Assembly: GCA_002269645.1 (NCBI GenBank)
Contig: NIVC01000750.1
Coordinates: 129,915-193,914, forward strand
DNA length: 64,000 nucleotides
Direction: 5' to 3'
DNA from: Macrostomum lignano
Lineage: Eukaryota
Shown: one piece after another, positions 1,155 to 64,000 of the stretch
Layout of the letters: each line of letters opens with the position of its first letter
Numbering within the stretch: the first letter of the stretch is position 1
Notes under the pieces: model-generated
The model's database searches: none
The model's input: only the letters and a program-made list of their open reading frames with translations
What the model was told of the DNA's origin: nothing
Translations under genes and position numbers: made by a program

Positions 1155-2460
1155 CTGACAAGCAGGAAGTAAACCTCCGGCCGCGTTGAAATCTCCTTAA
1201 ACAGGTTAACAAACTCTGAGCTACTCAAACGACCGCGGGAAGAGATTGCGTTAGCGATGTCCACCTCCTGGATTTGTGGCGAATAGGAAGAAATTTTTAT
1301 GGTGGGCTGAATAGGATAAAAATCACCAGTGACTAGGCTGAATGCAATGGGATCTTATTGGGATAAAATTCCCCTAGAACTAGGCTGAATGCAATGGGAT
1401 CTTATTGGGATAAAAATCACCAGTGACTAGGCTGAATTCAATGGGATCTTATTGGGATAAAATTTCCCTGGAACTAGGCTGAATGCGATGGGATCTTATT
1501 GGGATAAAATTCCCATGGAATATGATGAATGCAATGGGATCTTATTGGGATAAAATTCCCATGGAATATGATGAATGCAATGGGATCTTATTGAGATAAA
1601 ATTCCCCTGGAACTAGGCTGAATGCAATGGGATCTTATTGGGATAAAATTCCCCTGGAACTAGGCTGAATGCAATGGGATCTTATTGGGATAAAATTCCC
1701 CTGGAACTAGGCTGAATGCAATGGGATCTTATTGGGATAAAATTCCCCTGGAACTAGGCTGAATGCAATGGGATCTTATTGGGATAAAATTCCCCTGGAA
1801 CTAGGCTGAATGCAATGGGATCTTATTGGGATAAAATTCCCATGGAATATGCTGAATGCAATGGGATCTTATTGAGATAAAATTCCCCTGGAAATAGGCT
1901 GAATGCAATGGAATTTTATTGGGATAAAATTCCCCTGGGACTAGAATAATGCAATGGGATCTTATTGAGATAAAAATCCCAAGGAAAAGGAAGCAATGAT
2001 GCAAAAGCAAAGAACCGTTACCCTCACCTTCAACTTCTTTTTAATCCTGGAGGTGTTGACGCCGCTGTTGAGTTTCTTCATCAGCTGGATGACGTCCTGC
2101 TCATCGAGAAATCCGTCTTCGTCTAGTGAAGCGGCTGAGAACACTTCTTCAAGCCATCTAGCAATGTTATTTATTGGTAAACTAATTTTTATGTCTACTG
2201 TCAATATGACTACCATATTTGGTAAGTGATGAGTGCATCTTGACTGCATCTTGGCAAATACGGACAAAGTTGACTCACCTGTCGCGCATGAGTTGCCGTT
2301 TCTCAATTGTATCACTTGCTAAAATAAAAGTACAAATAAACCGGTTAGCAAGTTTTAGTGACCGATTTGCTGCGTATTCTAATTTATTAATGACTAACTG
2401 ACAAACAAACAGACACTAGGATGGACACTGACAGGCACTAAAACACAGACAGACAGACAC

Positions 2461-9700: not shown

Positions 9701-12700
9701 GTAAATGAGTGAGTGAGTGAGTGAGTGAGTGAATGAATGAGTGAGTGAGTAAGTGAATGAATGAGTGAGTGAATGTGAGAATGAGTGAGTAAATGAGTAA
9801 GTGAATGAGTGAATGAGTGAGTGAATGAGTGAGTCAGTGAGTGAGTGAGTGAGTGAGTGAGTGAGTGAGTGAGTGAGTGAGTGAGTGAGTGAATGAGTGA
9901 GTAAATGAGTAAGTGAATGAGTGAATGAGTGAGTAAATGAGTAAGTGAATGAGTGAATGAGTGAGTAAAGGAGTGAGTCAGTAAGTGAGTGAGTGAATGA
10001 ATGAGTGAGTGAATGTGTGAATAAACTAGTGAGTAAGTGAGTGAATGAGTGAGTGAGTGAGTAAGTGAGTGAGTGAATGAGTGAGTAAATGAGTAAGTGA
10101 ATGAGTGAATGAGTGAGTGAATGAGTGAGTCAGTGAGAATATGTAAATGAGTACGAGGGTCACTCAGAAAGTTCTTAGCTTGAACACGAAAACAGCAACA
10201 AATGAACTAAAAAACGACTACAAGTGCTCAAAATACTCTCCACCGGCATTGATACAGGCTTGCATCCTGTGAAACCAGCTGTCGAAGCACTGCCGCCAAT
10301 CCTCATCCCGGAGCTCCTCGATGATGTTTTTAAACTCATTCACAGCTTCTTCCGGTGAAGAAAAGACCTGGCCCTTCAGAATCTCCTTGCACTTCGGAAA
10401 CAGAAAAAAGTCGCACGGTGCCAGGTCTGGACTGTAAGCAGGGTGAGTCATCAGCTGGACCCCACAGTCAGCCAGAAACTCCAGAGTTTGAGCCGCCGTG
10501 TGCGCGCTGGCGTTGTCGTGGTGCAGAAGCACCCCACGCATTCCGCACCTTGGGCGCCTCTGGCTCACAGCAGAAAAGACCTTGGGCAGGCAAACCGTTG
10601 TGTACCAGTCAGCGGTGACTGTCTGGCGATCTTCAAGTGAAACGGAAGCCACATGCCCAGTGCGCATGAAGAAACAGGCCACCATCTGCTTGCCGACACT
10701 CCGGCTGCGTCGAAACTTGGTGGGGCTGTCCTCGTCTCCAAAGGTCCACATGGCTGACTGGCGCTTGCTTTCGGGGTCGTATTGATAAATCCAGGTCACA
10801 TCGCCCGTGAGGATGTCCCAGATACGCCGGCTGGTCCCGGATTCGAATTTCTGCAGCATGAATCGGCACCAAGCCACCCTGGTGTCCTTCTGCACGTCCG
10901 ACAGCTGATGGGGGATCCACCGGGAAGCCAGCTTCCGCACTCCAAGGTGTTCGTGCATAATGGCGTGCACACTCCCCGATCCAATACCGATCTCCTGCTG
11001 GATCTGCTGGTAGGTCACTCGCCGGTCAGCGGCAATCATGCTGGACACAGCGCAGATATTTTCTGGAGTCACTGCGTCACAGGGTCTCCCGGATCGATGT
11101 TCATCTTCGAGGCTTTCTCGACCTCGGCGAAACTCAGCGAACCAGTTTTTGACGGTTGCGTATGAAGGACATACATGGGTGAAAACGTTCTGTAAAGTTT
11201 GATACGATTCGGCCGGCGACTTGCCTTGCTTGAAGTGCAGGTACATCATTGCTCTGAAGTCGCGATTTTCCAGCTTCATTGTTGAATTGAAGATCTCAGG
11301 GGGGTGAACTGACTTTAACTCGCTGCAGTGGACTCAAAAGTGGCTGCTTCTGTTTGAAATTTTTGCTGCGATACTTTTAAAAGTTGGTCTTTACCATAGA
11401 CAAATTTCATGCTTCTACGTCTCGTGGATCCTACTCAGGCTAAATACTTTCTGAGTGACCCTCGTAATGGCGCAAGTAAAATGTAAGCTGTTAATTACAC
11501 AAAAGTTTCCAAAAGCTGAACTCCAGCGAACAGATAAAAACGGGAATTTATTGAACTTTAGAGCCCACTTTGCTCGGTGGAGATCTTATCTTAAAAATTT
11601 TCCTGAGAAAATCGCTCCAAAACGAGTTCGAGTTTCAAAAAGCTGTCACGCCCAAAACCCCCTCATCCACTTCTACCCCGTGTCCCAGACTCCTTCCTCA
11701 TCTCGCCAAGATGGGGATTTCCGCGCCAACGAACTTCCCGGTTGGCTGAGTCAATAAAACGCGCGCATATAAAAGTGCGGACGCCGCGGGAAGAAAGGCG
11801 AAGGCTAAAAATGGGAGGAAAAAAACGAAAGACTCTCCCGACCGGGCTGATCTTATCTACGGTTGCCATGCCATCCTTCCTGATATCTTTTCAGGGTCAT
11901 CCATTCCGCAGAGTTTTTCTTTCAAGTCTTGAGTTCTTTTTTTCTTCAAAAAATTGACTTTGCTCAATTCCGTTAGCTTTGAGTCTCCCCTGTCAGGCCA
12001 AAAAACGATCGCTTATACTCGCAGCTGTCTACCCAGCAAGACTACTCAGATGACCTAATCTAGAAGAGCAGTTGTCTATCCAGCAAGACTACTCAGATGA
12101 CTTAATCTAGAAGAGTAGCTGTCTACCCAGCAAGACTACTCAGATGACCTAATCTAGAAGAGCAGTTGTCTACCCAGCAAGACTACTCAGATGATCTAAT
12201 CTATAAGAGCAGCTGTCTACCCAGCAAGACTACTCAGATGCCTGATCTAGATGAGTAGCTGTCTACCCAGCAAGACTACTCAGATGCCTGATCTAGATGA
12301 GTAGCTGTCTACCCAGCAAGACTACTCAGATGACCTAATCTATAAGAGCAGCTGTCTACCCAGCAAGACTACTCAGATGACCTAATCTATAAGAGTAGCT
12401 GTCTACCCAGCAAGACTACTCAGATGACCTAATCTAGAAGAGTAGCTGTCTACCCGATAATAATCTACTCAAATAAGCAGAGAAAACTGGTCAAATATCG
12501 AAGCTCTACTCACCATCGATAACGCGAATTCCCTTGTCAAAGGACGATGAAAGAAATGACACAGATTTTTTCTGTGTTGGCGTTGGAGATGAGACACTGC
12601 TGCCTCCGCTACCAGGGTCTTGACACTGCGACTTCAACAGGCCTTGAAGTTTGCCTGTACGAGCTTGAGCTATTGGAGTTGATGATGATGTTGAAGCTGA

Positions 12701-25609: not shown

Positions 25610-28069
25610 TTCCTGCAGGCAGAGGCACAGCTGCCGCTCGTGGTCCGTTGCCGCCGCCGCCTTTGCCACCGAGAGGCGCACCGGATCCGGTGGTCGGCAG
25701 TCGGACAAACGGAAGCTGGAACAATGGGGTCGGCAGCCGCGGTCAGCAGCAGCAAGTGAGCAGCCGGCAGTTGTGCTCCCACTGTCGTCAAGAGTTGGGT
25801 AAGAATCAGTTTTTGATATTTGTTGAAATTGATGGAGATTTGAATGTAGCTATTGCCTAAATCGGTTTTAAAATTCATACAAAATAACTTGTACCAATCA
25901 GAGACCTTTGTACCAATCAGAGACCTTTGTACCAATCAGAGACCTTTGTACCAATAAGAGACCTTTGTGCCAATCAGAGACCTTTGTACCAATCAGAGAC
26001 CTTTGTACCAATCAGAGACCTTTGTACCAATCAGAGACCTTTGTACCAATCTGTGCAAAGCTCAAATTTGTTCTGCTATCTTATATTTATAGCTGTTGAC
26101 CTTAAACCATGCACGTACCGCGTGATCACTGTTAAAATGCTATCAAGATGCCATTGGACAAATTGTAAAAATACCACACTTTTCCGCCTCTGGGATTTCT
26201 ACCAACTACACAGGCTCGGGAGCAGCGATGGCCATCGAGACGCTGCAGCTGTTCTATCACGTGAAATGCTTTCGCTGCAGCGTCTGCAACACCCCGCTTG
26301 GCAACGGCAGCTCCGGTGCGGACGTTCGAGTCAGACGCGATCAGCTGCACTGCCCCAGCTGCTTCAGCTCAGACGAAGGTATCTCCTGCATCAATCTTGG
26401 TCCCGTGTGATAACCGACCTTTAGTGCCTAACCAACATTGTTTGAGTTCCTAACACTAATCTGTGGCTCTGGTTGTGCACGCTTTCCTTTTTACTCACTT
26501 GGCAATAACTTTAAATATGAAGGTCTATCTGTATACTAACACTTTATTAACACTGGTGCTGCGCATGCGTATTAAAACTGTAGTTTCAATACTGTTTAAC
26601 CATTTCCTGCGATTCGGTTCACTGTGTCTTGAGCTCCACAAGCCTGCATGCAGAATTAGGGTTTAACATGTGCAATACAATCAAGAAGAGTTTTGTGTAA
26701 CTGTATCTCAGAGCATTAATTCAATAGACGTTGATTTGCATGGGTGAAAGACACGCCGAATTAGAATTAGTGCTGATTCACCAACATAAGCAATATTCGT
26801 ACGATAAATTTAAATTAAGAGACACAAAATGCGCTTTTTTCTTACTTACGCATTCATTCTCGGTTGTGGTTTTGGTGTTGTTTATCTTTGAAGACAGCAG
26901 GTAAGTGTCAAAGTTTCATTGCTGGTTTTTCCTCTCTGATTTCCTTTTAACTTCTTTTTTGTTTGAGTCAGTACCCTACTTCTGTGCGAGTATATCAGGC
27001 ACAAGGCACAAAAAAGGATTAAATGTACATTCGCTAGTCAGGTTTAGCTTAAATGTACACTCCTGCCATTCTTCAGGCGCAATGAAGATTAAATGTACAT
27101 TCGCTAGTCAGGATAGCTTAAATGTACAGTGGGAGAAGTGCACACTCGCTAGTCGCATTGATTGGAAGTAATTTTCAGCTTTAATAGAAATATTTGCAAC
27201 TAACAAACAATTTATCTAACACTGCACATATACGCTGCACTTAATCACGTCTTTCTCTTACATATAACCAGCTCCTGCTTTTTTCACGCTTCTCCTAACC
27301 ATTTTAGTTCCGCGAAGAACTTTACCTGGGCCGAGCTGACATGCTTCAAGCTGACAAGCTGGCGTTAAAGTTTGACGCGACCGTCAAGACCTCAAATTGT
27401 TCGTTGTAGATTAACATTAACTTTTTGACATGAAATTAACCGCTGATTTCACACAATAAATACAGTAACACGCCTCACACCATGTTAGCAATTTTGCACT
27501 GTTCTCTGTTTTCCGCAACATTGCGCGCACCGTTTAACTTGGTCAACTGAAACAGAAGGTCTGCACTGGCGAGATGGGTAGCTTTTCAGATCGGAATTTT
27601 GAATCGCAAATGAAGCAAGCAAGTGTTTATGGTTGTATTCATTTGTTAAAATCAAATATGGATTTTGTACAAAGATTTGCTTTCTGAATGAGGTTTCTTT
27701 TGCGATTTAGAAGTCCGGAAGGAGTGTAAAAAATGTTTAGCAGAACCAAACGCAATACCTTTTTTGTTTTGCGTTGAGAAATTAAAACCGCCATTTTCTG
27801 TAATGCATATTCTTTCGATAAAGCCTGAATCCTAAAATTTCCAAAAAAAAATCGGTTTCCTGTCCATCTACCTAAGTAGTCCTTGGTGAGATACGCGAGT
27901 GAAGCGCAGTCCCGATCTCTACTTCAGACGTCCATGATGCCAATGTATTGGGGTTCTCCAGCTATTTTAATGAAACTCATTGTCCAACCCGGCATAGAGC
28001 ACTGTATTTGTACAGAACTGCTTTATTCGTCTCATTTTTTCTTCAGGACAAAAATTCAGCTGCGTTTGA
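14723..28069 (+). CDS. LMO7: LMO7/LIMCH1/Smallish-like protein: N-terminal CH domain, low-complexity poly-Gln/Pro middle, C-terminal LIM domain, C-terminal FSCV
   Basis: Exons 14723-14979, 15117-15189, 17570-17679, 18197-18236, 18984-19301, 19821-19987, 21007-21868, 23481-23591, 23777-23991, 24645(or 24547)-25058, 25395-25798, 26214-26378, 28047-28069; GT-AG and phase-consistent. CH: [46 protein letters not shown] motif. LIM: [63 protein letters not shown] at 28172-28177. The 5' boundary of exon 10 is uncertain. Confidence 0.88.
15657..16522. repeat. Purine-rich 12-bp repeat GAGAGGCAGAGG
   Basis: LMO7 intron 2; source of the LPLPL/RGRG ORFs. Confidence 0.95.
17195..17365. repeat. 12-bp repeat GGGAGATGAGAG
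   Basis: Direct reading. Confidence 0.88.
17715..18100. repeat. 30-33-bp minisatellite TCTCTCAGACACCTGTCTGAAGCATCTACTACT
   Basis: Fills LMO7 intron 3. Confidence 0.94.
19355..19705. repeat. 16-bp minisatellite GTAACCTAGTCCCTGA
   Basis: LMO7 intron 5. Confidence 0.95.
20135..20997. repeat. 41-bp minisatellite CTCATCTGTGAGTGATTTGTCTCCATCCTGATTCGTCTTAA
   Basis: About 21 copies ending ~10 nt before the acceptor at 21006. Confidence 0.96.
23615..23750. repeat. 32-bp repeat GACTAGATTCACTGATGCTGGTTGCAGGGAGT, ~4 copies
   Basis: Occupies most of the 185-nt LMO7 intron 8. Confidence 0.88.
24305..24425. repeat. (ACAG)n/(GCAG)n microsatellite
   Basis: Direct reading. Confidence 0.9.
25888..26050. 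repeat. 19-bp minisatellite TGTACCAATCAGAGACCTT
   Basis: About 8 copies in LMO7 intron 11. Confidence 0.94.
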
Positions 28070-31845: not shown

Positions 31846-32178
31846 ATGTACCTGGCCCCCATCTACCACGTGGAATTCATATCTAACAGATGACACCCAG
31901 CTGTCTAACATGCGGCCAAGTTGTCTAACAGGTAAGAGCCATGTCTCCTCCGTAAAACAGACAAACAGCTCACAGCATGAGAAGTGTGTCTCTAACGCTT
32001 CGCTAGCATCCTTCGCATAGATATCGATTTGCGCCAATCCAGAAGACATCTCCTCGCAACACCCACTTGGCCCCTCATTGGCTGCCCGCAATGAGCATTT
32101 AAACTCGAATTTTTCTTGCTCATTCAAATCTCGCGCCAGGAAAATCAGATAGAAAACAACTCAAGCCAGTCCGTCATC

Positions 32179-32541
32179 ATGACTCAACCAAGTGGAACGG
32201 TGCCAGTGGCCCTGCTGCTACTTCTAGCTCTGGCTATTCAACTCTCGGCTGAGAGTGTCTCAGCCGCTCCTTCTGGTCGAGGCTCGAACCAACGGCTCGT
32301 GGCCGCTCCGGCTGACTGGGCCGCCGCTGCCGCCGCCGCCGCCGCAGCCGCAGCGGACGTCGCAGCGGAAGAGGCCGCCGAGGCCAACGACAGCTCCGAC
32401 CTGACGGAGCCCGGCGACAAGCGAGGCATGTTCCGCTATGGAAAACGACAGATGTTCCGGTTCGGAAAGCGAGCCCTGCTCGGAAAGCGAGCTTACATGT
32501 TCCGCTATGGAAAACGGCAGATTGAAAGCCCCCAATACTGA
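32179..32541 (+). CDS. Neuropeptide precursor (120 aa) yielding GMFRYamide, QMFRFamide, ALLamide, AYMFRYamide; FaRP/LFRFamide(sNPF)-like
   Basis: Hydrophobic signal peptide (VPVALLLLLALAIQLSAESVSA), acidic/Ala spacer, then KR-GMFRYG-KR-QMFRFG-KR-ALLG-KR-AYMFRYG-KR: dibasic cleavage sites with Gly amide donors. Confidence 0.92.
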   Translation: MTQPSGTVPVALLLLLALAIQLSAESVSAAPSGRGSNQRLVAAPADWAAAAAAAAAAAADVAAEEAAEANDSSDLTEPGDKRGMFRYGKRQMFRFGKRALLGKRAYMFRYGKRQIESPQY

Positions 32542-45108: not shown

Positions 45109-45775
45109 GGTCTGTTTGCCTGTCTGTCTGCCTGTCTGTCTGTCTGTCCGTGTCGGTCTGGCTATTCCAAACTTATGAAAATTATATTTACAAACATAAT
45201 ACTAACAAGTTAGGAAAATTACCCCCTCCAGAACAGCCAAAAATGCATATTAAAAAGTGGTTAAGCTTCGATTAAATTGCTGAACTAGTAGTGCATTGCA
45301 GCATCAAAAAAGATCCCATCGAAGACCATAATCCTTAGAAAAATGAATAAAAGTGAATAATTTCCAACGCCATGCCGGGCAGCTCACCTGCAATAGACAG
45401 GTACCGCTTGGACACAAACTTGGACTCAAGCTCCATCAGCTGTTGAGTTGTGAATGGAGTTCTGGGCTTCCTATTGGCTTTGTGCTTTCGCAGCGGGCAC
45501 CGCTGCTGGGTGTTGCTGCAGCCGCCGCCGCCGCCACCGCCGCCGCCAAAGGCACTGAGCATGGAAGCCAAACTTGGCCTTTGCTGTGTCGTCTGCTGCA
45601 TCAACTGCATCCAAGAGGCAGAAGTGGAAATCTGCTGCTGCTGCTGCACCGCAGGCGAAGAAGCCGGTGCCGATGCAAGCAGGTCATCGATGCCAAACGA
45701 CGTGAACCGTTTTCCACTGCTGTCCATCGCTTGATTGCCTTCTTCAACTGTTCTGTGCAGGCTCATGGAGTACAC
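42796..45775 (-). CDS. Msx: Msx/msh homeobox transcription factor, 3 coding exons
   Basis: Exons 45775-45388, 43526-43377, 42962-42796 (both introns phase 1, GT-AG). eh1-like [10 protein letters not shown], then [37 protein letters not shown]|[40 protein letters not shown], diagnostic of Msx. The start could be 45775 or the later Met (MDSSG). Confidence 0.95.
43085..43285. repeat. 20-bp minisatellite CCCACCCAGGGACAGCGCCC
   Basis: Msx intron 2. Confidence 0.9.
43567..43682. repeat. 12-bp repeat CTCAGCAATAGA
   Basis: Msx intron 1, near the acceptor. Confidence 0.9.
43733..43990. repeat. (TAGG)n microsatellite
   Basis: Nearly pure; Msx intron 1. Confidence 0.98.
44665..45150. repeat. (CTGT)n microsatellite
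   Basis: Msx intron 1. Confidence 0.97.
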
Positions 45776-46964
45776 CTGAGCAGAGAGAAGCTCCTCTTTA
45801 ATAAGAAGACTCTGGGCTGCTTCGTATTGGGGTGGGGGGAATTTATTGGCTGGGCGGCCTGTCGTGGAAAAGGAATCAAGGCGCTACTTCCGCAATTTAT
45901 ATTCCAAAACTGACTCACGCCGTAGCGCGGGGGCTGTTGAGCTCGTCAAAAATCTTTTGAGCAGTATATTTTTTCTATAACTCAACTCTGACTTCAATAA
46001 CGCGGGCTGCTATTGTAACTTAATGGTTTAATTTGTGCTTTTCTTTATCTAGTCTTGACGGGGACCTTGACGAATTGGCAGAGGTTATTAAAATGCCGCC
46101 AATTTACCTGACACCCTATTGTTGCGGCTGCGAAAGTAGAGATTATCTCGATATTAAAATATGAACGATGGAGGCCGCAGAAATTTTTATTGGCGGACTG
46201 CTTTCCGGACTTGGCGGGCCTCGGGGCTGAGAGGAAATTAGCAATTTTCTGGGAGACGGGTCACCACTTTATTCAGCTTCCTGCATGGAGCCGAGATCAA
46301 CAAAAAATCTTAGCCCATTGGCCCGCTATCTGACCGGGGGAGCGGTGAGCGTCATCTCATTGGCTGGTAAGCCGGGGGCCAGCCTCCGGTTCAGGGACGT
46401 CTAAAAATAGCACACAGCTGGACTAGAAAGTCAATATTTTTTCTTAGAAATGATCTAGAGAACATCCATTAGACTAAATTCGGAGAAATTTGCGAAATCT
46501 ATCGGGCTATGCAGTTTGAAATAGAATTTATGAGACGCTGGTGACAATAGGTATATAGAGAACTCTCCAAAGCCAAGTCACTTTTACAACAGCTTCAAAT
46601 AGTTATCAAAGACGTGACGCAACCCAGAATGCAACTGCCTCGAGGCTTCACAATGACAATACAATACCGTTGAAAGCTACGCTCGTATTATTAAACTGTA
46701 GGCTGTGATGTTTGCTTGTCTGAATCAATTTTACGAGTGTTTGCGTGTAAATTAACAAAAAATGGACTAGAAGAACATATGCTGCCTTCATTTGACTGCC
46801 AGCCATTTAGAATAAGGTTAGGGGTTTACATGTACAAATAGAAGTATTGCATGGCGCCATAGTTATATAGACTAGCCATCAGAGCCCCCCGTTGGGGAGA
46901 CAACAAAGGATGGAATAATTTTTTTGAATAAACTACATGTAGCTTCTGACCGCTCAGTCTTAAC

Positions 46965-51125: not shown

Positions 51126-51199
51126 GTTTAAAAGTAGTAGTGTAAAATTTTTTATTAAAAGGTTTTATTAAAGGACTAAATAAAAACACTTAAATTACT

Positions 51200-53575
51200 G
51201 CACTCGATAAGCCAAGGATTATTGCTATTAATAAACCAAGGACTACTGCACTCGATAAACCAAGGACTATTGCTCTTGGCAAACCAAAGATTACTGCACT
51301 TGATTAATCAAGGATTATTGCTATTAATAAACCAAGGATTACGGCACTTGGAAAACCAAGGATTACTGCACTCGATAAACCAAGGACTATTGCTCTTGGC
51401 AAACCAAGGATTACTGCACTCAAGAAGCCAAGAATTATTGCACTTAGAAAACCAAGGATTAATGCACTCGATAAACCAAGGACTATTGCTCTTGGCAAAC
51501 CAAGGATTACTGCACTCAAGAAGCCAAGGATTATTGCTATTAATAAACCAAGGATTACTGCACTTGGAAAACCAAGGATTACTGCACTCGATAAACCAAG
51601 GACTATTGCACTTGATAAACCAAGGAATATTGCACTTGATAGGCCAAGGATTACTGCACTTGATAAACCAAGGATTATTGCACTTGATAGGCCAAAGATT
51701 ACTGCGCTTGATAAACCAAGGAATATTGCACTTGATAGGCCAAGGATTATTGCACTTGATAAGCCAAGGATTACTGCGCTTGATAAACCAAGGATTATTG
51801 CACTTGATAAACAAAGGATTATTGCACTTGATAAACAAAGGATTATTGCACTTGATAAACAAAGGATTATTGCACTTGATAAACCAAGGATTATTGCACT
51901 TGATAAGCCAAGGATTATTGCACTTGATAAGCCATGGATTATTGCACTTGATAGTAAAGAATGTTGCACTTGATAAGCCAAGGATTAATGCACTGGATTA
52001 TTCAAGGATTATTGATATTAATAAACCAAGGACTACTCCACTCGATAAACCAAGGATTATTGCTCTTAATAAACCAAGGATTACTGCACTTGGAAAACTA
52101 AGGATTACTGCACTCGATAAACCAAAGACTATTGCACTTGATAAACCAAGGATTATTGCACTTGATAGGCCAAGGATTACTGCACTTGATAAACCAAGGA
52201 TTATTGCACTTGATAGGCCAAAAATTACTGCGCTTGATAAACCAAGGATTATTGCACTTGATAAACCAAGGATTATTGCACTTGATAAGCCAAGGATTAT
52301 TGCACTTGATAAACCAATGATTATTGCAGTTGATAAGCCAAGGATTATTGCATCTGATAAACCAAAGATTATTGCACTTGATAAACCAAGGATTATTGCA
52401 CTTGATAAACAAAGGATTATTGCACTTGATAGGCCAAAGATTACTGCGCTTGATAAACCAAGAATTATTGCACTTGATAAACCAAGGATTATTGCACTTG
52501 ATAAGCCAAGGATTATTGCACTTGATAAACCAAGGATTATTGCAGTTGATAAGCCAAGGATTATTGCATCTGATAAACCAAGGATTATTGCACTTGATAA
52601 ACCAAGGATTATTGCACTTGATAAACCAAGGATTATTGCACTTGATAAACCAAGGATTATTGCTCTTGGCAAACCAAGGATTACTGCACTCGATAAGCCA
52701 AGGATTATTGCTCTTAATAAACCAAGGATTACTGCACTTGGAAAACTAAGGATTACTGCACTCGATAAACTAAGGATTATTGCTCTTGGCAAACCAAGGA
52801 TTATTGCACTTGATAGGCCAAGGATTACTGCACTTGATAAACCAAGGATTATTGCACTTGATAAACCAAGGATTATTGCACTTGATAAGCCAAGGATTAT
52901 TGCACTTGATAGGCCAAGGATTACTGCGCTTGATAAACCAAGGATTATTGCACTTGATAAACCAAGGATTATTGCAGTTGATAAGCCAAGGATTATTGCA
53001 CTTGATAAACCAAGGATTATTACACTTGATAAACCAAGGATTATTGCACTTGATAAACCAAGGATTATTGCACTTGATAGGCCAAGGATTACTGCACTTG
53101 ATAAACCAAGGATTATTGCACTTGATAGGCCAAAGATTACTGCGCTTGATAAACCAAGGATTATTGCAGTTGATAAGCCAAGGATTATTGCACTTGATAA
53201 ACCAAGGATTATTTCACTTGATAAACCAAGGATTATTGCACTTGATAAACAAATATTGCACTTGATAAACCAAGGATTATTGCACCTGATAAGCCAAGGA
53301 TTACTGCGCTAGATAAACCAAGGATTATTGCACTTAATAAACCAAGGATTATTGCACTTAATAAACCAAGGATTATTGCACTTGATAAACCAAGGATTAT
53401 TGCACTTGATAAACAAAGGATTATTGCACTTGATAAACCAAGGATTATTGCACTTTATAAGCCAAAGATTACTGCACTTGATAAACCAAGGATTATTGCA
53501 CTTGATAAACCAAGGATTATTGCACTTGATTAATCAAGGATTATTGCTATTAATAAACCAAGGATTATTGCACTA
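51200..53575. repeat. 21-bp minisatellite GCACTTGATAAACCAAGGATT(ATT), ~2.4 kb
   Basis: Inside the Helitron candidate; source of the 696-aa ALDKPRII ORF. Confidence 0.97.
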
Positions 53576-54190: not shown

Positions 54191-54942
54191 GATTGTTCAC
54201 TTTTGGAGGGGTTGCTTGCTGTCTTGGGAATATTTTCTATTTAGGGAAACGATATTTTGTTGACTGTTTGTTAATTTTAGAGAAAAAGTGATTTTTTAAT
54301 TTTGCAAACATCTTAGTCCGTGACAATTTTACACGAATAAGGTGATTTTTAAAATGTGAAGAAGGAATTAGTGTTTAAGAAAATGTGTTTTTTTATTGTT
54401 TTCCATGAACTATTTTTGCTCCTTTCTTATTGGGCGCCCCGAAGGGGGGCCGCACTAGATTGCTAGTGATGATAACTAAATGGGGCCAACCGGTACAGTA
54501 TGTGCGTGCATACTACTGTCAGTTCAGTAGAAAGATAACAGAAGAATTTTAATATTGCGCAGTAAAGACAAAAATGCTCAATAAATTCATCGAGCCTATG
54601 ATCAGAATCTCTTGCAGGTGGGTTTCTATCGCCATTTTAACTGCCGTTTTTTAAATACCCCGTATATTCTTTCTGTCTACTGAACTGGAAACTAGAAAAC
54701 TAGAAAGTAAAAAACAATAGATGGGCCACTCCATTGTCGCTTTTGATTACGAGACTACTATGAGCGTCTATTTAGAGTTTTTTCTTATAAATTTGCGCAT
54801 CAAAATAAATAAGTACATGTATATAGTTTTTGTCTGTGGCTCAAACCACAGGATCAACTTTGTTTGAGACTCGCTCAGAATTTTACGCTAGTTATTCTGT
54901 AAAGCAATTTAACCTACATTTATAGATGAAATCCGACAGAAA

Positions 54943-55988
54943 ATGAGTCTGAATTTGTCTGGCGACTACGAGGATCCCAACGGCGATCGGCGACTGCCGA
55001 CAACTGGCCAGCTTCGCATCCAGCTGTCCATGCTGGGCGACCATGTCTGGGCGTCGGACACCTCCTACGACGATTTGTTCACCGAAGACGCCTGGAAACA
55101 GAGGCTTTTCCGTCGGTACAGACAGGCTGCTGGCCTGAGCCCCCTGAACTGCGTTCGGCACTACTCTTACCTGGCGCACTTGCAGCGGCTGCAGCGAAAG
55201 ATGGAGGAATCTTTGAAGCCCCATCGAAGCTTGGAGGCTCGGGTTAAGGTGAACGGAATGGAGCGATTTACAAGGGCAGCAGGTGTTCGCTTGGCTGTCT
55301 CTTCTGACTCAGAGTGATTTCCGAGTGTGACATCGGTGATTCTAGAGTGGGACATATATTGTTTAGGTGAATTTTAGTCTGACACATAAAGCTCTAGAGT
55401 CTGACTCATGTAGCTCTAGAGTCTGACTCACGTAGCTCTAGACTCTGACACATGTAGCTCTAGACTCTGACACATGTAGCTCTAGACTCTGACACATGTA
55501 GCTCTAGACTCTGACACATGTAGCTCTAGAGTCTGACACATGTAGCTCTAGAGTCTGACACATGTAGCTCTAGACTCTGACACATGTAGCTCTAGAGTCT
55601 GACACATGTAGCTCTAGACTCTGACACATGTAGCTCTAGAGTCTGACACATGTAGCTCTAGATTCTGACACATGTCGCTCTAGACTCTGACACATGTAGC
55701 TCTAGAGTCTGACACGGGTGGTTTCGAAGTCTGACGCGGGCAGCTAGACAACAAGTACACGCGCACCAACAGGGTATGAAAGAAGCTGTTCAAGAGGCCC
55801 CGAAGTCCGCATTCGACTCCATCCAAGAGCCAAAACGCCGGCAGCTGGCCGAAAAGTGCAATGCCACTCTTCGATGGTTGGCTGAGAAAGAGAGAAATCC
55901 TGCCAGCCCGGATGAGTACCGCCGCATGGAGAATGATCTCAACTCGGCTTTTCAGGAGGCGTTCAAGCGGCGATTCACTCTCGCGTGA
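54943..55988 (+). CDS. Small two-exon protein (~173 aa) whose C-terminal half resembles the Hsp70 alpha-helical lid subdomain
   Basis: Exons 54943-55248 (AAG|GTGAAC) and 55773-55988 (CAACAG|GGT) join in phase 0. RSLEARVKGMKEAVQE...DSIQEPKRRQLAEKCNATLRWL...ASPDEYRRMENDL aligns by eye with recalled HSPA8 NSLESYAFNMKATVED...[22 protein letters not shown]...AEKEEFEHQQKEL. An upstream exon is not excluded. Confidence 0.72.
55385..55715. repeat. 22-bp minisatellite TCTGACACATGTAGCTCTAGAC
   Basis: Fills the intron of the Hsp70-lid-like gene. Confidence 0.95.
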
Positions 55989-61517: not shown

Positions 61518-63628
61518 ATGGACTATTCAACAGCAGACAAGCAGCAGCTGATAGACAAGATCAAAGAACGTGACCATAAAATTGAACGCTATGAGAAGCG
61601 ACTCACAGGTAAAGTGCTCTACTCAAACTTGCAGTCACTTTCAGATAGCTAGATAAGAATCTATCTAAACATTTTGCGCCTGTGCTCATCACTTCAAACC
61701 AACAGATGTTGTTGTCGCATTCAAAAATCTACAAAAAGAGAAAGCCGCCCTGGAGGACACTCTTCAGCAGGTGAATTTTGCTTCTACGAGCAGAAACAAG
61801 CGACCTAGTCCGCATAGGACTGCCGCCTCAACTACTGCTGAGACTACAAATGATGAAGGAGAAGATGATTCATCCGCTGGTGTCACCTCAGAAGCTGCCG
61901 AGGCTTACGAAGCTCGCATAGCTAAACTGTTAGAAAGCGTGAACGCTTTGACTCAACAGAAAAACGAATTGTCTGCCACTTATCAGGCTGACAAACGGAT
62001 TCTCAGGGTCAGTTTGATTTTGCACTAATTGTAATGTTTTGTTCGACCTGTCCTACCAGATCCCCACAGCCCTGTCTCCCAGATCCCTACAGCCCTGTCT
62101 CCCAGATCCCCACAGCCCTGTCTCCCAGATCCCCACAGCCCTGGCTCCCAGATCCCCACAGCCCTGTCTCCCAGATCCCCACAGCCCTGTCTCCCAGATC
62201 CCACAGCCCTGGCTCCCAGATCCCCACAGCCCTGTCTCCCAGATCCCCACAGCCCTGTCTCCCAGATCCCCACAGCCTTGTCTCCCAGATCCCCACAGCC
62301 CTGTCTCCCAGATCCCACAGCCCTGTCTCCCAGATCCCCACAGCCCTGGCTCCCAGATCCCCACAGCCCTGTCTCCCAGATCCCCACAGCCCTGGCTCCC
62401 AGATCCCCACAGCCCTGTCTCCCAGATTTCCACAGCCCTGGCTCCCAGATCCCCACAGCCCTGTCTCCCAGATCCCCACAGCCCTGGCTCCCAGATCCCC
62501 ACAGCCCTGTCTCCCAGATCCCCACAGCCCTGTCTCCCAGATCCCCACAGCCCTGGCTCCCAGATCCTCACAGCCCTGTCTCCCAGATCCCCACAGCCCT
62601 GGCTCCCAGATCCCCACAGCCCTGGCTCCCAGATCCCCAAAGCCCTGTCTCCCAGATCCCCACAGCCCTGTCTCCCAGATCCCCACAGCCTTGTCTCCAG
62701 ATCCCCACAGCCCTGTCTCCCAGATCCCCACAGCCCTGGCTCCCAGATCCCACAGCCCTGTCTCCCAGATCCCCACAGCCCTGTCTCCCAGATCCCCACA
62801 GCCCTGGCTCCCAGATCCTCACAGCCCTGTCTCCCAGATCCCCACAGCCCTGTCTCCCAGATCCCCACAGCCCTGTCTCCAGATCCCCACAGCCCTGCTT
62901 CCAGATTCCACAGCCCTGTCTCCCAGATCCCCACAGCCCTGGCTCCCAGATCCCCACAACCCTGTTTCCCAGATTCCCACAGCCCTGTCTCCCAGATCCC
63001 CACAGCCCTGGCTCCCAGATCCCCACAGCCCTGTCTCCCAGATCCCCACAGCCCTGTCTCCCAGATCCCCACAGCCCTGGCTCCCAGATCCCCACAGCCC
63101 TGGCTCCCAGATCCCCACAACCCTGTTTCCCAGATTCCCACAGCCCTGGCTCCCAGATCCCCACAGCCCTGTCTCCCAGATCCCTACAGCCCTGTCTCCC
63201 AGATCCCACAGCCCTGGCTCCCAGATCCTCACAGCCCTGTCTCCCAGATCCCCACAGCCTGGCTCCCAGATCCCCACAGCCCTGGCTCCCAGATCCCCAC
63301 AGCCCTGGCTCCCAGATCCCCAAAGCCCTGTCTCCCAGATCCCCACAGCCCTGTCTCCTAGATCCCACAGCCCTGTCTCCCAGACAACCTTGTCTTCACA
63401 CTAGCAACTTGAAACTCCATCCAAACCTACCTCTTCGCACCCGCAGGAGAGTTTGAGCACACAATAGCTGAGCAGAAGCGCGACCTGGAGTCCTGTGCCA
63501 TTGTTCGACGCGATCTTGAGGCTCAATTGAACGAATTTAGATCCCGCGCCAGACAGCAGGCCAAGGTGGAGCAGGACACCAGTGCGCTTAGCTCCCGGCT
63601 GGCTGCAGAGACTGCGGCTAGAGAGGAG
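61518..63628 (+). CDS. GCC1: GRIP and coiled-coil domain protein 1 (GCC88 golgin), first three coding exons; continues beyond window
   Basis: Exons 61518-61608, 61706-62007, ~63447-63628. DKQQLIDKIKERDHKIERYEKRLT|DVVVAFKNLQKEKAALEDTL matches recalled GCC1 RLKDVVRAYKSLLKEKEALEASI, and QKNELSATYQADKR matches QKSKMEASYLADKK. The exon 2/3 junction has a phase mismatch (see findings). Confidence 0.85.
62055..63385. repeat. 23-bp minisatellite CCCTGTCTCCCAGATCCCCACAG
   Basis: About 58 copies filling GCC1 intron 2. Confidence 0.97.
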
Positions 63629-63631
63629 GTG

Positions 63632-63713
63632 AGTCTGTGTCTGTCTGTCTGTCTGTCTTAGTGTCTGTCTGTCTTAGTGTCTGTCTGTCTGTCTGTCTTA
63701 GTGTCTGTCTTAG

Positions 63714-63768
<55 letters not shown>

Positions 63769-63953
63769 GCTGTCTGTTGTCTGTCTGTCTGTCTGTCTTA
63801 GTGTCTGTCTGTCTGTCTGTCTTAGTGTCTGTCTGTCTGTCTGTCTTAGTGTCTGTCTGTCTGTCTGTCTTAGTGTCTGTCTGTCTGTCTGTCTTAGTGT
63901 CTGTCTGTCTGTCTGTCTGTCTGTCTTAGTGTCTGTCTGTCTGTCTGTCTTAG

Positions 63954-64000
<47 letters not shown>
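63632..64000. repeat. (CTGT)n with CTTAGTGT variants
   Basis: Begins directly after the GCC1 exon 3 donor; reverse complement of the 2443-3724 family. Confidence 0.97.

What the first reader, a model, noticed from the sequence alone, without database searches (positions are those of the whole stretch)
54943..55988. Stand-alone Hsp70 lid-domain gene with an unrecognised N-terminal half
Seen: two exons splice in frame to ~173 aa. The last ~85 aa align by eye with the Hsp70 lid helices (SLE...MK..V.E; I.E..++.+..KCN..+.WL; A...E+...+.+L). There is no ATPase domain, no beta-sandwich substrate domain and no EEVD (the protein ends RRFTLA), and none is found in the flanking sequence. Knowledge: the lid normally exists only inside full Hsp70/Hsp110 proteins. 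Inference: a domain-shuffled small protein that might act as a co-chaperone or decoy, or use the helical bundle for a new role. The intact ORF and canonical intron argue against simple debris.
Basis: partly seen in the sequence, partly recalled or inferred. Interest (0 to 1): 0.75.

Follow-up and report, generated by a model that had tools for sequence, protein, structure and literature searches.

The report
Small flatworm gene with Hsp70-lid remnant
A small two-exon gene of the flatworm Macrostomum lignano encodes a 173-residue helical protein whose second half is very probably a much-diverged copy of the helical "lid" of the Hsp70 chaperone, with no other Hsp70 part; the protein sequence is kept intact by selection, but its function is unknown.

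Summary
Exon 1 (54943-55248) and exon 2 (55773-55988) join through GT-AG sites into a 173-aa ORF. That ORF is identical to four GenBank "hypothetical proteins" of Macrostomum lignano (assembly Mlig_3_7), whose annotation derives from RNA-seq transcripts.

Residues ~86-160 match Hsp70 lid helices B-D in the same order, straddling the exon junction with no gap there:
- A profile of 120 real Hsp70 lids scores 19-21 bits, against at most 12.3 in 40,000 shuffles.
- hhalign gives P=7e-4.
- The PDB search puts Hsp70 lids on top, at E=0.03.
- Identity is 29-32% to individual lids.

Pfam does not recognise the protein, and the low-confidence AlphaFold models gave only generic helical-bundle matches. 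Homology is therefore probable (~0.8), not proven.

No ATPase domain, beta-sandwich or EEVD exists in the gene, in the 64-kb window, or around three paralogous loci. Across the paralogues all four coding differences are synonymous (0/400 nonsynonymous sites against 13/742 noncoding sites, p=0.006), so the gene is not decaying debris.

The N-terminal ~64-85 residues have no relative anywhere, and no homologue was found outside M. lignano. The lid-like segment is basic, whereas real lids are acidic, which argues against a simple decoy role. Function is untested. Moderate interest: a lineage-restricted gene apparently built on an Hsp70 fragment.

The parts
54943..55248 (+). Exon 1: codons 1-102 (M...SLEARVK), from the start codon to the donor AAG|GTGAAC
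   Evidence: Identical splice sites in all four genomic copies. GC at codon positions 1/2/3 is 0.60/0.42/0.74, as in other coding exons of the window. An in-frame stop lies at 54910-54912 upstream.
54943..55134 (+). Orphan N-terminal segment, residues 1-64 (the unmatched part extends to ~85); acidic (pI 5.1), low-confidence helical or disordered
   Evidence: No Pfam hit. No convincing homologue among 1.84 billion representatives. No match to the end of the Hsp70 beta-sandwich. pLDDT 35-60.
55198..55248 (+). Lid-like segment, first part: residues 86-102, aligned to the first half of Hsp70 lid helix B (..SLE..)
   Evidence: hhalign Q86-159; HMM alignment 88-160; BLASTP 86-145.
55249..55772 (+). 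Intron of 524 nt, GT..AG, holding a 22-bp tandem array (55376-55715, 15.5 copies)
   Evidence: Intron length is 476, 524 or 1576 nt in the paralogues, while the splice sites are unchanged.
55773..55988 (+). Exon 2: codons 103-173 plus the stop (GMKEAV...RRFTLA*)
55773..55946 (+). Lid-like segment, second part: residues 103-160, aligned to the rest of helix B and to helices C and D (MK..V.E; KCN..L.WL)
   Evidence: Ten of 46 near-invariant lid columns are kept: L97 E98 M104 K105 K130 C131 W137 L138 A146 E150.
54464..54942 (+). Upstream block shared with the paralogous loci; putative promoter/5'UTR. A TATAAAT at 54786-54792 is present in all copies. Function not tested.
   Evidence: Homology to L003/L004 starts 479 bp before the ATG. 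In the aligned upstream block (470 bp taken, 445 ungapped columns) there are 8 substitutions plus 3 indels. The TATA reading is from the sequence only.

Best explanation
This is a real protein-coding gene known only from Macrostomum lignano. It has two exons and encodes 173 aa (20 kDa). Its C-terminal ~75-100 residues descend from the alpha-helical lid (SBD-alpha, helices B-D, possibly A) of a cytosolic Hsp70/Hsc70. The most likely origin is duplication of a 3' gene fragment that acquired a new, unrelated N-terminal ~65-85 residues and its own start codon.

Shown here: the gene structure, a transcript-derived annotation, four genomic copies, purifying selection on the protein, a residue-specific similarity to Hsp70 lids in the same order, and the absence of every other Hsp70 part.

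Inferred: the protein cannot bind ATP or clamp a substrate, so it is not a chaperone. It most likely acts as a small helical-bundle binding module. Its surface has changed from acidic to basic, and most lid-invariant surface residues are replaced. A new partner (an acidic protein or a nucleic acid) is therefore more likely than faithful mimicry of the lid towards Hsc70.
For: - Gene model and identity to PAA70082.1 and three others. The Mlig_3_7 GenBank annotation was built from StringTie/TACO/de novo transcripts plus TransDecoder (PMC5730564).
- Constraint: four coding differences among three distinct copies, all synonymous (p=0.003-0.014). Nonsynonymous 0/400 against noncoding 13/742 variable sites (Fisher p=0.006). 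No coding indels, but several in the flanks. Coding-type GC periodicity.
- Lid homology: PDB top hits 2p32, 4kbq, 3lof, 2lmg, 1ud0, 5gjj and 4po2, E from 0.031. Profile of 120 lids at 19.0/20.6 bits against shuffle maxima of 8.9/12.3. hhalign P=7e-4. 32% identity over 60 aa to P0107 and 29% over 73 aa to a cestode Hsc70 lid. The alignment crosses the splice junction without a gap there.
- Predicted helices 97-115, 123-143 and 148-169 fall where lid helices B, C and D align. The helix positions in Hsp70 are from my own knowledge.
- No NBD or SBD-beta in the window or the paralogous loci.
- Charge reversal: pI 8.9 and net +2, against a lid median of pI 4.9 and net -7.
Against: - Pfam HSP70 gives no hit even at E<=10.
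- The only calibrated database-wide E-value is 0.03. hhalign probability is only 26%.
- The AlphaFold models have low confidence, and Foldseek finds generic helical bundles rather than lids.
- No homologue outside M. lignano, hence no deep alignment and no between-species dN/dS.
- The selection test rests on only 4 coding and 13 noncoding differences between very recent paralogues.
- Expression is inferred from how the annotation was made. I saw no reads, and the gene ids appear in none of the papers or supplements searched.
- There is no evidence at all on function.
Confidence: 0.7

Rival explanations
1. Chance resemblance. The gene is a lineage-specific (possibly de novo) helical protein, and the likeness to the Hsp70 lid is convergence among amphipathic helices.
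For: - Pfam gives no HSP70 hit. The sub-threshold hits are other helical families: Spectrin E=0.017, AAA_13, TBCA.
- PDB E-values for Hsp70 lids (0.03) are only ~7-fold better than an obvious false positive, the T3SS co-chaperone at 0.22.
- Foldseek results are generic.
- Only 10 of 46 near-invariant lid columns are kept.
Against: - Shuffles that keep the hydrophobic/polar pattern and the G/P positions never come within 8 bits of the real score.
- 7 of the 10 PDB hits belong to one family and always fall on the lid part of the chain.
- The match covers three helices and two loops in order, with only two short gaps in the helix B-C and C-D loops, and crosses an intron.
- Pairwise scores reach 38.5 bits.
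Confidence: 0.15
2. Transcribed but functionless relic. It is an old Hsp70 3' fragment whose ORF survives by chance, and it was annotated only because TransDecoder accepts any ORF of 100 aa or more in a transcript.
For: - No homologue outside the species.
- The paralogues are so recent (about 1-2% noncoding divergence) that few changes are expected anyway.
- Lid-only ORFs from Hsc70 pseudogenes are annotated in other genomes.
Against: - At ~25-30% identity to any Hsp70 the fragment is old, yet the 173-codon ORF and both splice sites are intact in all four copies.
- All four coding changes are synonymous, no coding indels occur while the flanks carry several, and 0/400 nonsynonymous sites against 13/742 noncoding sites gives p=0.006.
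- Codon-position GC periodicity is retained.
Confidence: 0.1
3. It is the 3' end of a longer, conventional Hsp70-type gene whose upstream exons were missed.
For: A possible acceptor (ttatag|) lies at 54920-54925, 17 nt before the ATG, so an upstream exon or a spliced leader could join there.
Against: - tblastn with HSPA8 at E<=100 finds nothing Hsp70-like in the 55 kb upstream, on either strand, nor in up to 10 kb of flank at the other loci.
- The 9 kb upstream is mostly tandem arrays, and beyond them lies a homeobox gene on the other strand.
- An in-frame stop lies at 54910-54912.
- The transcript-based annotation starts the CDS at this ATG in all four copies.
Confidence: 0.03

Closest known systems
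Hsp70/Hsc70 C-terminal helical lid (SBD-alpha), e.g. C. elegans HSP-1 lid 2P32, human HSPA1A 3LOF/2LMG, rat Hsc70 1UD0
   Same: Helices B, C and D in the same order, with the LE..(5)..MK..V.E and KC....WL motifs. The core residues L97, M104, W137 and L138 are kept. The protein ends where the structured lid ends.
   Different: It is not attached to an NBD or a beta-sandwich, and it lacks the Gly/Pro tail and EEVD. Identity is 22-32%. 36 of 46 near-invariant columns are changed. It is basic (pI 8.9) instead of acidic (median pI 4.9). It is not recognised by Pfam PF00012.
Lid-only ORFs annotated from young Hsc70 gene fragments or pseudogenes (P0010 Capra ibex 172 aa, P0012 Monodelphis 176 aa, P0047 Sparganum proliferum 142 aa)
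   Same: Short predicted proteins made of an unrelated or truncated N-terminus plus the Hsp70 C-terminal region, located on chromosome-scale contigs.
   Different: Those are 68-97% identical to HSPA8 over the lid (P0010 97%, P0012 95%, P0047 68%). All are recognised by PF00012, and P0010 and P0012 keep the Gly-rich tail and EEVD (P0047 ends GIEKVE). There is no evidence that they are constrained. The flatworm gene is far more diverged, carries an intron inside the lid region, and shows purifying selection.
Truncated Hsp70 relatives such as HSPA13/STCH (ATPase core only; my own knowledge, not tested here)
   Same: They show that single Hsp70 domains can persist as independent genes.
   Different: This is the reciprocal case: those keep the NBD and lose the C-terminal domains, whereas here only the lid survives.
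Helical-bundle Hsp70 co-chaperone domains (BAG domain; functional analogy only)
   Same: A small helical bundle that could act on the Hsp70 system by binding alone.
   Different: There is no sequence or profile match. BAG binds the NBD as a nucleotide-exchange factor, and nothing here indicates that.

Membership tests
Hsp70 family (Pfam PF00012 HSP70) | Actin-like ATPase nucleotide-binding domain | tested here: not met
   It is absent from the 173-aa product. tblastn with HSPA8 finds none in the window or in the paralogous loci.
Hsp70 family (Pfam PF00012 HSP70) | Beta-sandwich substrate-binding subdomain (SBD-beta) | tested here: not met
   Residues 1-66 give no alignment to a profile covering the last SBD-beta strands. 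tblastn is negative. The model is all-helical.
Hsp70 family (Pfam PF00012 HSP70) | Score above the Pfam gathering threshold | tested here: not met
   No PF00012 hit at E<=10 for the whole protein or for either half.
Hsp70 family (cytosolic eukaryotic type) | C-terminal EEVD motif for TPR co-chaperones | tested here: not met
   The protein ends ...FKRRFTLA*.
Hsp70 C-terminal helical lid subdomain (SBD-alpha) as an evolutionary domain | Significant sequence/profile similarity to lids, in the same order over helices B-D | tested here: met
   19.0-20.6 bits against a 120-lid profile, with shuffle maxima of 8.9/12.3. hhalign P=7e-4. PDB top hits at E=0.031. Pairwise 38.5 bits. This is marginal by database-wide standards.
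Hsp70 C-terminal helical lid subdomain (SBD-alpha) as an evolutionary domain | Three-dimensional fold superposable on solved lids | tested here: inconclusive
   The single-sequence AlphaFold models have pLDDT 65-66. 3lof_E matches at TM(target) 0.64 and rmsd 2.2 A over 67 columns but ranks 39th. It is absent from the top 50 for the C-terminal model.
Spectrin repeat / other helical-bundle Pfam families | Score above the gathering threshold | tested here: not met
   Spectrin 16.1 bits against a 29.9 cut-off; AAA_13, TBCA_PH and Cluap1 are all far below their cut-offs.

The most novel reading that the evidence does not exclude
A free-standing, selectively maintained Hsp70 lid has been recruited as a trans-acting factor. 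It could dock on Hsc70 (on the SBD-beta, or by pairing with the resident lid) to tune client release or oligomerisation. Alternatively, given its new basic surface, it could tether RNA or an acidic partner, as the basic lid of ribosome-bound Ssb does. Either would be the first functional 'lid-only' protein.
Probability: 0.12. Interest if true: 0.7.

Novelty: new variant of a known kind. Interest (0 to 1): 0.4.

Why it matters
If the reading is right, this is a clean example of a lineage-restricted gene built from a fragment of one of the most conserved proteins known. The fragment was then remodelled (charge reversal, new N-terminus, intron with a variable minisatellite) and kept by selection. 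That bears on how orphan genes arise, since many "orphans" may be unrecognisably diverged domain fragments. It also offers a natural experiment on what an isolated Hsp70 lid can do. M. lignano has RNAi and transgenesis, so the gene is testable. Nothing yet points to an important function, so the value is moderate.

Tried and rejected
- By eye, residues 19-66 seemed to parallel the last two beta-strands and linker of the Hsp70 SBD (GVPQIEVTFDID... / GRLSKEE). A profile covering that region gives no alignment to residues 1-66. hhalign with the small alignment starts at L65, aligned to the 'LSKE' at the start of helix A, but the larger real-data profile supports only 86-159. The idea of helix A and the beta-end is therefore dropped or left open.\n- P0003, a 1033-aa bacterial Lcl_C protein, hit residues 33-78 at E=2.7e-6. 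This is a weak motif match summed over four repeats; the best single HSP is 37 bits, which is not significant library-wide. I reject it as chance.\n- Heat-shock elements: GAAnnTTCnnGAA with up to 1 mismatch occurs no more often than chance, and none lies near the gene.\n- Capture by a transposon: no terminal inverted repeats around the locus and no second copy in the window.\n- Exact-product look-ups of the ML2 versions and of the single-exon ORFs found nothing.\n- Searches for the gene ids in paper texts and in the supplements of four M. lignano expression papers found nothing; one of those papers had no supplements held.\n- Foldseek on both models was uninformative.\n- The UniProt versions P0001 (168 aa) and P0002 (140 aa) differ from the 173-aa protein only by frameshift-like blocks. 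I take these as indel errors of the older ML2 assembly. PMC5730564 reports more intact ORFs in Mlig_3_7. Without their DNA I could not prove it.

Full report
**Where the window comes from.** The spliced product is identical to four GenBank proteins of Macrostomum lignano (PAA70082.1, PAA74229.1, PAA77315.1, PAA77343.1; locus tags BOX15_Mlig030349g1 and BOX15_Mlig027880g1). One of the four loci returned for that protein, L002 on contig NIVC01000750.1 of GCA_002269645.1, is the window itself (window position = L002 position + 44942). The window is typical of this repeat-rich genome: long tandem arrays flank the gene on both sides.

**Checking the observation.**
- An ATG at 54943 opens a frame that reaches a canonical donor, AAG|GTGAAC, after 55248.
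- A canonical acceptor, CAACAG|GG, precedes 55773, and the frame closes at TGA 55986-55988.
- The product is 173 aa ending RRFTLA.
- Two other GT sites, at 55283 and 55285, give a broken frame or a 185-aa product. The 55248 donor is the one used in the GenBank models and in both UniProt versions.
- An in-frame stop lies at 54910-54912.
- Codon-position GC (0.60/0.43/0.68) has the coding pattern also seen in the homeobox, LIM and neuropeptide-like exons of the window.

**Is the C-terminal part an Hsp70 lid?** Pfam says nothing: no PF00012 hit at E<=10 for the whole protein or for either half, only sub-threshold helical families. Other evidence favours the lid.
- A phmmer search of all PDB sequences puts Hsp70 lid fragments on top. 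For the whole protein these are 2p32 (E=0.058), 4kbq, 2lmg, 3lof and 1ud0. With residues 65-173 alone, 7 of the 10 hits at E<=10 are Hsp70, the best at E=0.031, and the match always falls in the lid part of the chain.
- I first built a six-sequence lid profile from sequences written from memory. It scored 14.3 bits against a maximum of 9.9 in 20,000 shuffles, and hhalign gave P=0.004. With the hydrophobic/polar pattern and the G/P positions kept, 1 of 20,000 shuffles reached the real score.
- I then replaced this profile with real data: 120 cytosolic Hsp70 lids retrieved from the protein database.
- Against the real-data profile the protein scores 19.0 bits, and 20.6 bits for residues 65-173. 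The maxima were 8.9 in 20,000 composition shuffles and 12.3 in 20,000 pattern-preserving shuffles.
- hhalign gives P=7e-4 over query 86-159.
- The best single lids are P0107 (32% identity over 60 aa, 38.5 bits) and a cestode Hsc70 lid, P0056 (29% over 73 aa).
- The aligned stretch, SLEARVK|GMKEAVQEA...EKCNATLRWL...DEYRRMENDL, runs across the exon junction without a gap there. It has only two short gaps, in the helix B-C and C-D loops. This supports the splice model and the homology together.
- Ten of 46 near-invariant lid columns are retained, including the core residues L97, M104, W137 and L138 and the KC pair.
- Structure prediction did not help. Single-sequence AlphaFold gave all-helical models with pLDDT 65-66. 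Foldseek returned generic helical bundles. The human Hsp70 lid 3lof_E appears at rank 39 (TM on target 0.64, rmsd 2.2 A over 67 columns) for the whole model and not in the top 50 for the C-terminal model.

I put the probability of true common descent at about 0.8.

**What is not there.** tblastn with human HSPA8 (sequence from my own memory, used only as a probe) at E<=100 finds nothing Hsp70-like anywhere in the 64 kb except exon 2 itself. It also finds nothing in the flanks of the three other loci. The 9 kb upstream on the + strand is mostly tandem repeats. Beyond them lies a homeobox exon on the opposite strand. There is no EEVD and no Gly/Pro tail. Residues 1-64 (arguably 1-85) match no Pfam family. 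They also have no convincing relative among 1.84 billion representative proteins, and no match to the end of the Hsp70 beta-sandwich. The only non-flatworm hit of that search, a bacterial Lcl_C protein, is a weak motif summed over four repeats and is rejected.

**Is it a living gene?**
- The GenBank annotation of Mlig_3_7 was produced from a genome-guided transcriptome: StringTie/TACO plus de novo transcripts, boundaries from spliced-leader and poly(A) reads, and ORFs by TransDecoder (PMC5730564). The model therefore implies a spliced transcript, though I did not see reads.
- The four loci represent three distinct sequences, since L003 and L004 are identical. They are syntenic, with a GRIP-domain golgin gene ~5.3-5.6 kb downstream in three of them (L001, L003 and the window; L004's held flank shows no downstream gene).
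- All keep the same splice sites and the identical protein. Intron length varies (476, 524 or 1576 nt) through the 22-bp array.
- The coding sequences differ at four sites, all third-position synonymous transitions. The chance of 4 of 4 being synonymous is 0.003 for random changes and 0.014 for transitions only.
- Nearby unique noncoding sequence shows 13 variable sites in 742 ungapped columns plus several indels. That compares with 0 in 400 nonsynonymous sites and no coding indel (Fisher p=0.006).
- The sample is small because the paralogues are young, but it points to purifying selection and against neutral decay.

**How it probably works.**
- Shown: an expressed-looking, constrained, 20-kDa all-helical protein whose C-terminal part is lid-like.
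- Established knowledge: Hsp70 needs the NBD for ATP-driven cycling and the beta-sandwich for substrate binding. The lid alone only covers the pocket and contacts partners.
- Inferred: the protein cannot act as a chaperone and most likely serves as a binding module.
- The segment aligned to the lid has pI 8.9 and net charge +2. The same columns of 120 real lids have median pI 4.9 and net charge -7, range -12 to -1. Most invariant surface residues are replaced. A faithful "decoy lid" therefore seems less likely than a bundle with a new partner.
- A positively charged lid region is what lets yeast Ssb contact ribosomal proteins and rRNA (abstract of PMC5123055, seen). This makes a nucleic-acid or acidic-protein partner a reasonable but untested idea.

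**Comparison with what is known.** It is not a member of the Hsp70 family in any functional or Pfam sense: NBD, SBD-beta, EEVD and the gathering score were all tested and not met. It is best described as a derivative of the SBD-alpha domain. Lid-only ORFs do exist in annotations of other animals, for example Capra ibex P0010, Monodelphis P0012 and Sparganum P0047. Those are 68-97% identical to HSPA8 over the lid, and P0010 and P0012 keep the tail and EEVD. They look like recent pseudogene or fragment ORFs. The flatworm gene differs in being old (about 25-30% identity), intron-bearing, remodelled and constrained. I found no paper describing a functional stand-alone lid. That search was shallow and is not proof of absence.

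**Verdict.** Novelty: a new variant of a known kind. Interest is about 0.4. It is a tidy case of a lineage-restricted gene built from a chaperone fragment, in an organism where RNAi and transgenesis make it testable, but nothing yet indicates what it does.

Noticed in passing
window 32095-32538 (+): An ORF with a signal-peptide-like start (VALLLLLALAIQLSAESVSA) followed by GKR-flanked repeats MFRYG / MFRFG / YMFRYG. It looks like an FMRFamide-like neuropeptide precursor exon. No Pfam hit.
   Followed up: partly
window 10221-11333 (-): An uninterrupted 371-codon mariner/Mos1-type transposase ORF (HTH_48 E=6e-12, Transposase_1, DDE_3). It may be a recently active element.
   Followed up: partly
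window 45338-45883 (-): A homeobox exon ([19 protein letters not shown]..., Msx-like by eye). Only the first 27 homeodomain positions are present, so the homeobox is split by an intron.
   Followed up: partly
window 26126-26407 (+) and 1965-2318 (-): A LIM-domain exon (E=7e-8) and an EF-hand-containing exon (weak, E=0.004). These are parts of other genes in the window.
   Followed up: no
window 51194-53574, versus L003/L004: A 24-bp tandem array of ~99 copies, plus the adjacent arrays (about 4 kb in all) just upstream of the gene, is present in this copy and in L001 but absent from the paralogous loci L003/L004. Satellite gain or loss has occurred since the genome duplication.
   Followed up: partly
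window 55376-55715 (intron): A 22-bp minisatellite (AGTCTGACACATGTAGCTCTAG, 15.5 copies) sits inside the intron. Its copy number differs between paralogues, giving introns of 476, 524 and 1576 nt.
   Followed up: partly
window ~61560-64000 (+); L001 17365-22098, L003 12223-16927: The downstream neighbour on the same strand is a GRIP-domain golgin gene (PF01465, 669-678 aa), whose own sequence holds a 23-bp x 58 array (62047-63384). I did not check whether it shares a transcriptional unit with the lid-like gene.
   Followed up: no
UniProt A0A1I8I7Y3 (P0001) and A0A1I8F6M0 (P0002): The versions of this protein from the older ML2 assembly differ only by short blocks that read like compensated frameshifts, plus a premature stop (RWVG*). 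These are probably indel errors of that assembly rather than real alleles.
   Followed up: partly
window 54926-54945, versus L003/L004: An upstream ATG at 54926 opens a 6-codon uORF whose stop (TGA) overlaps the main ATG (AAAATGA). L003/L004 carry a 2-nt 'AT' insertion here, which would instead put that uATG in frame with a long alternative-frame ORF over exon 1. Its relevance depends on where the transcript starts.
   Followed up: no
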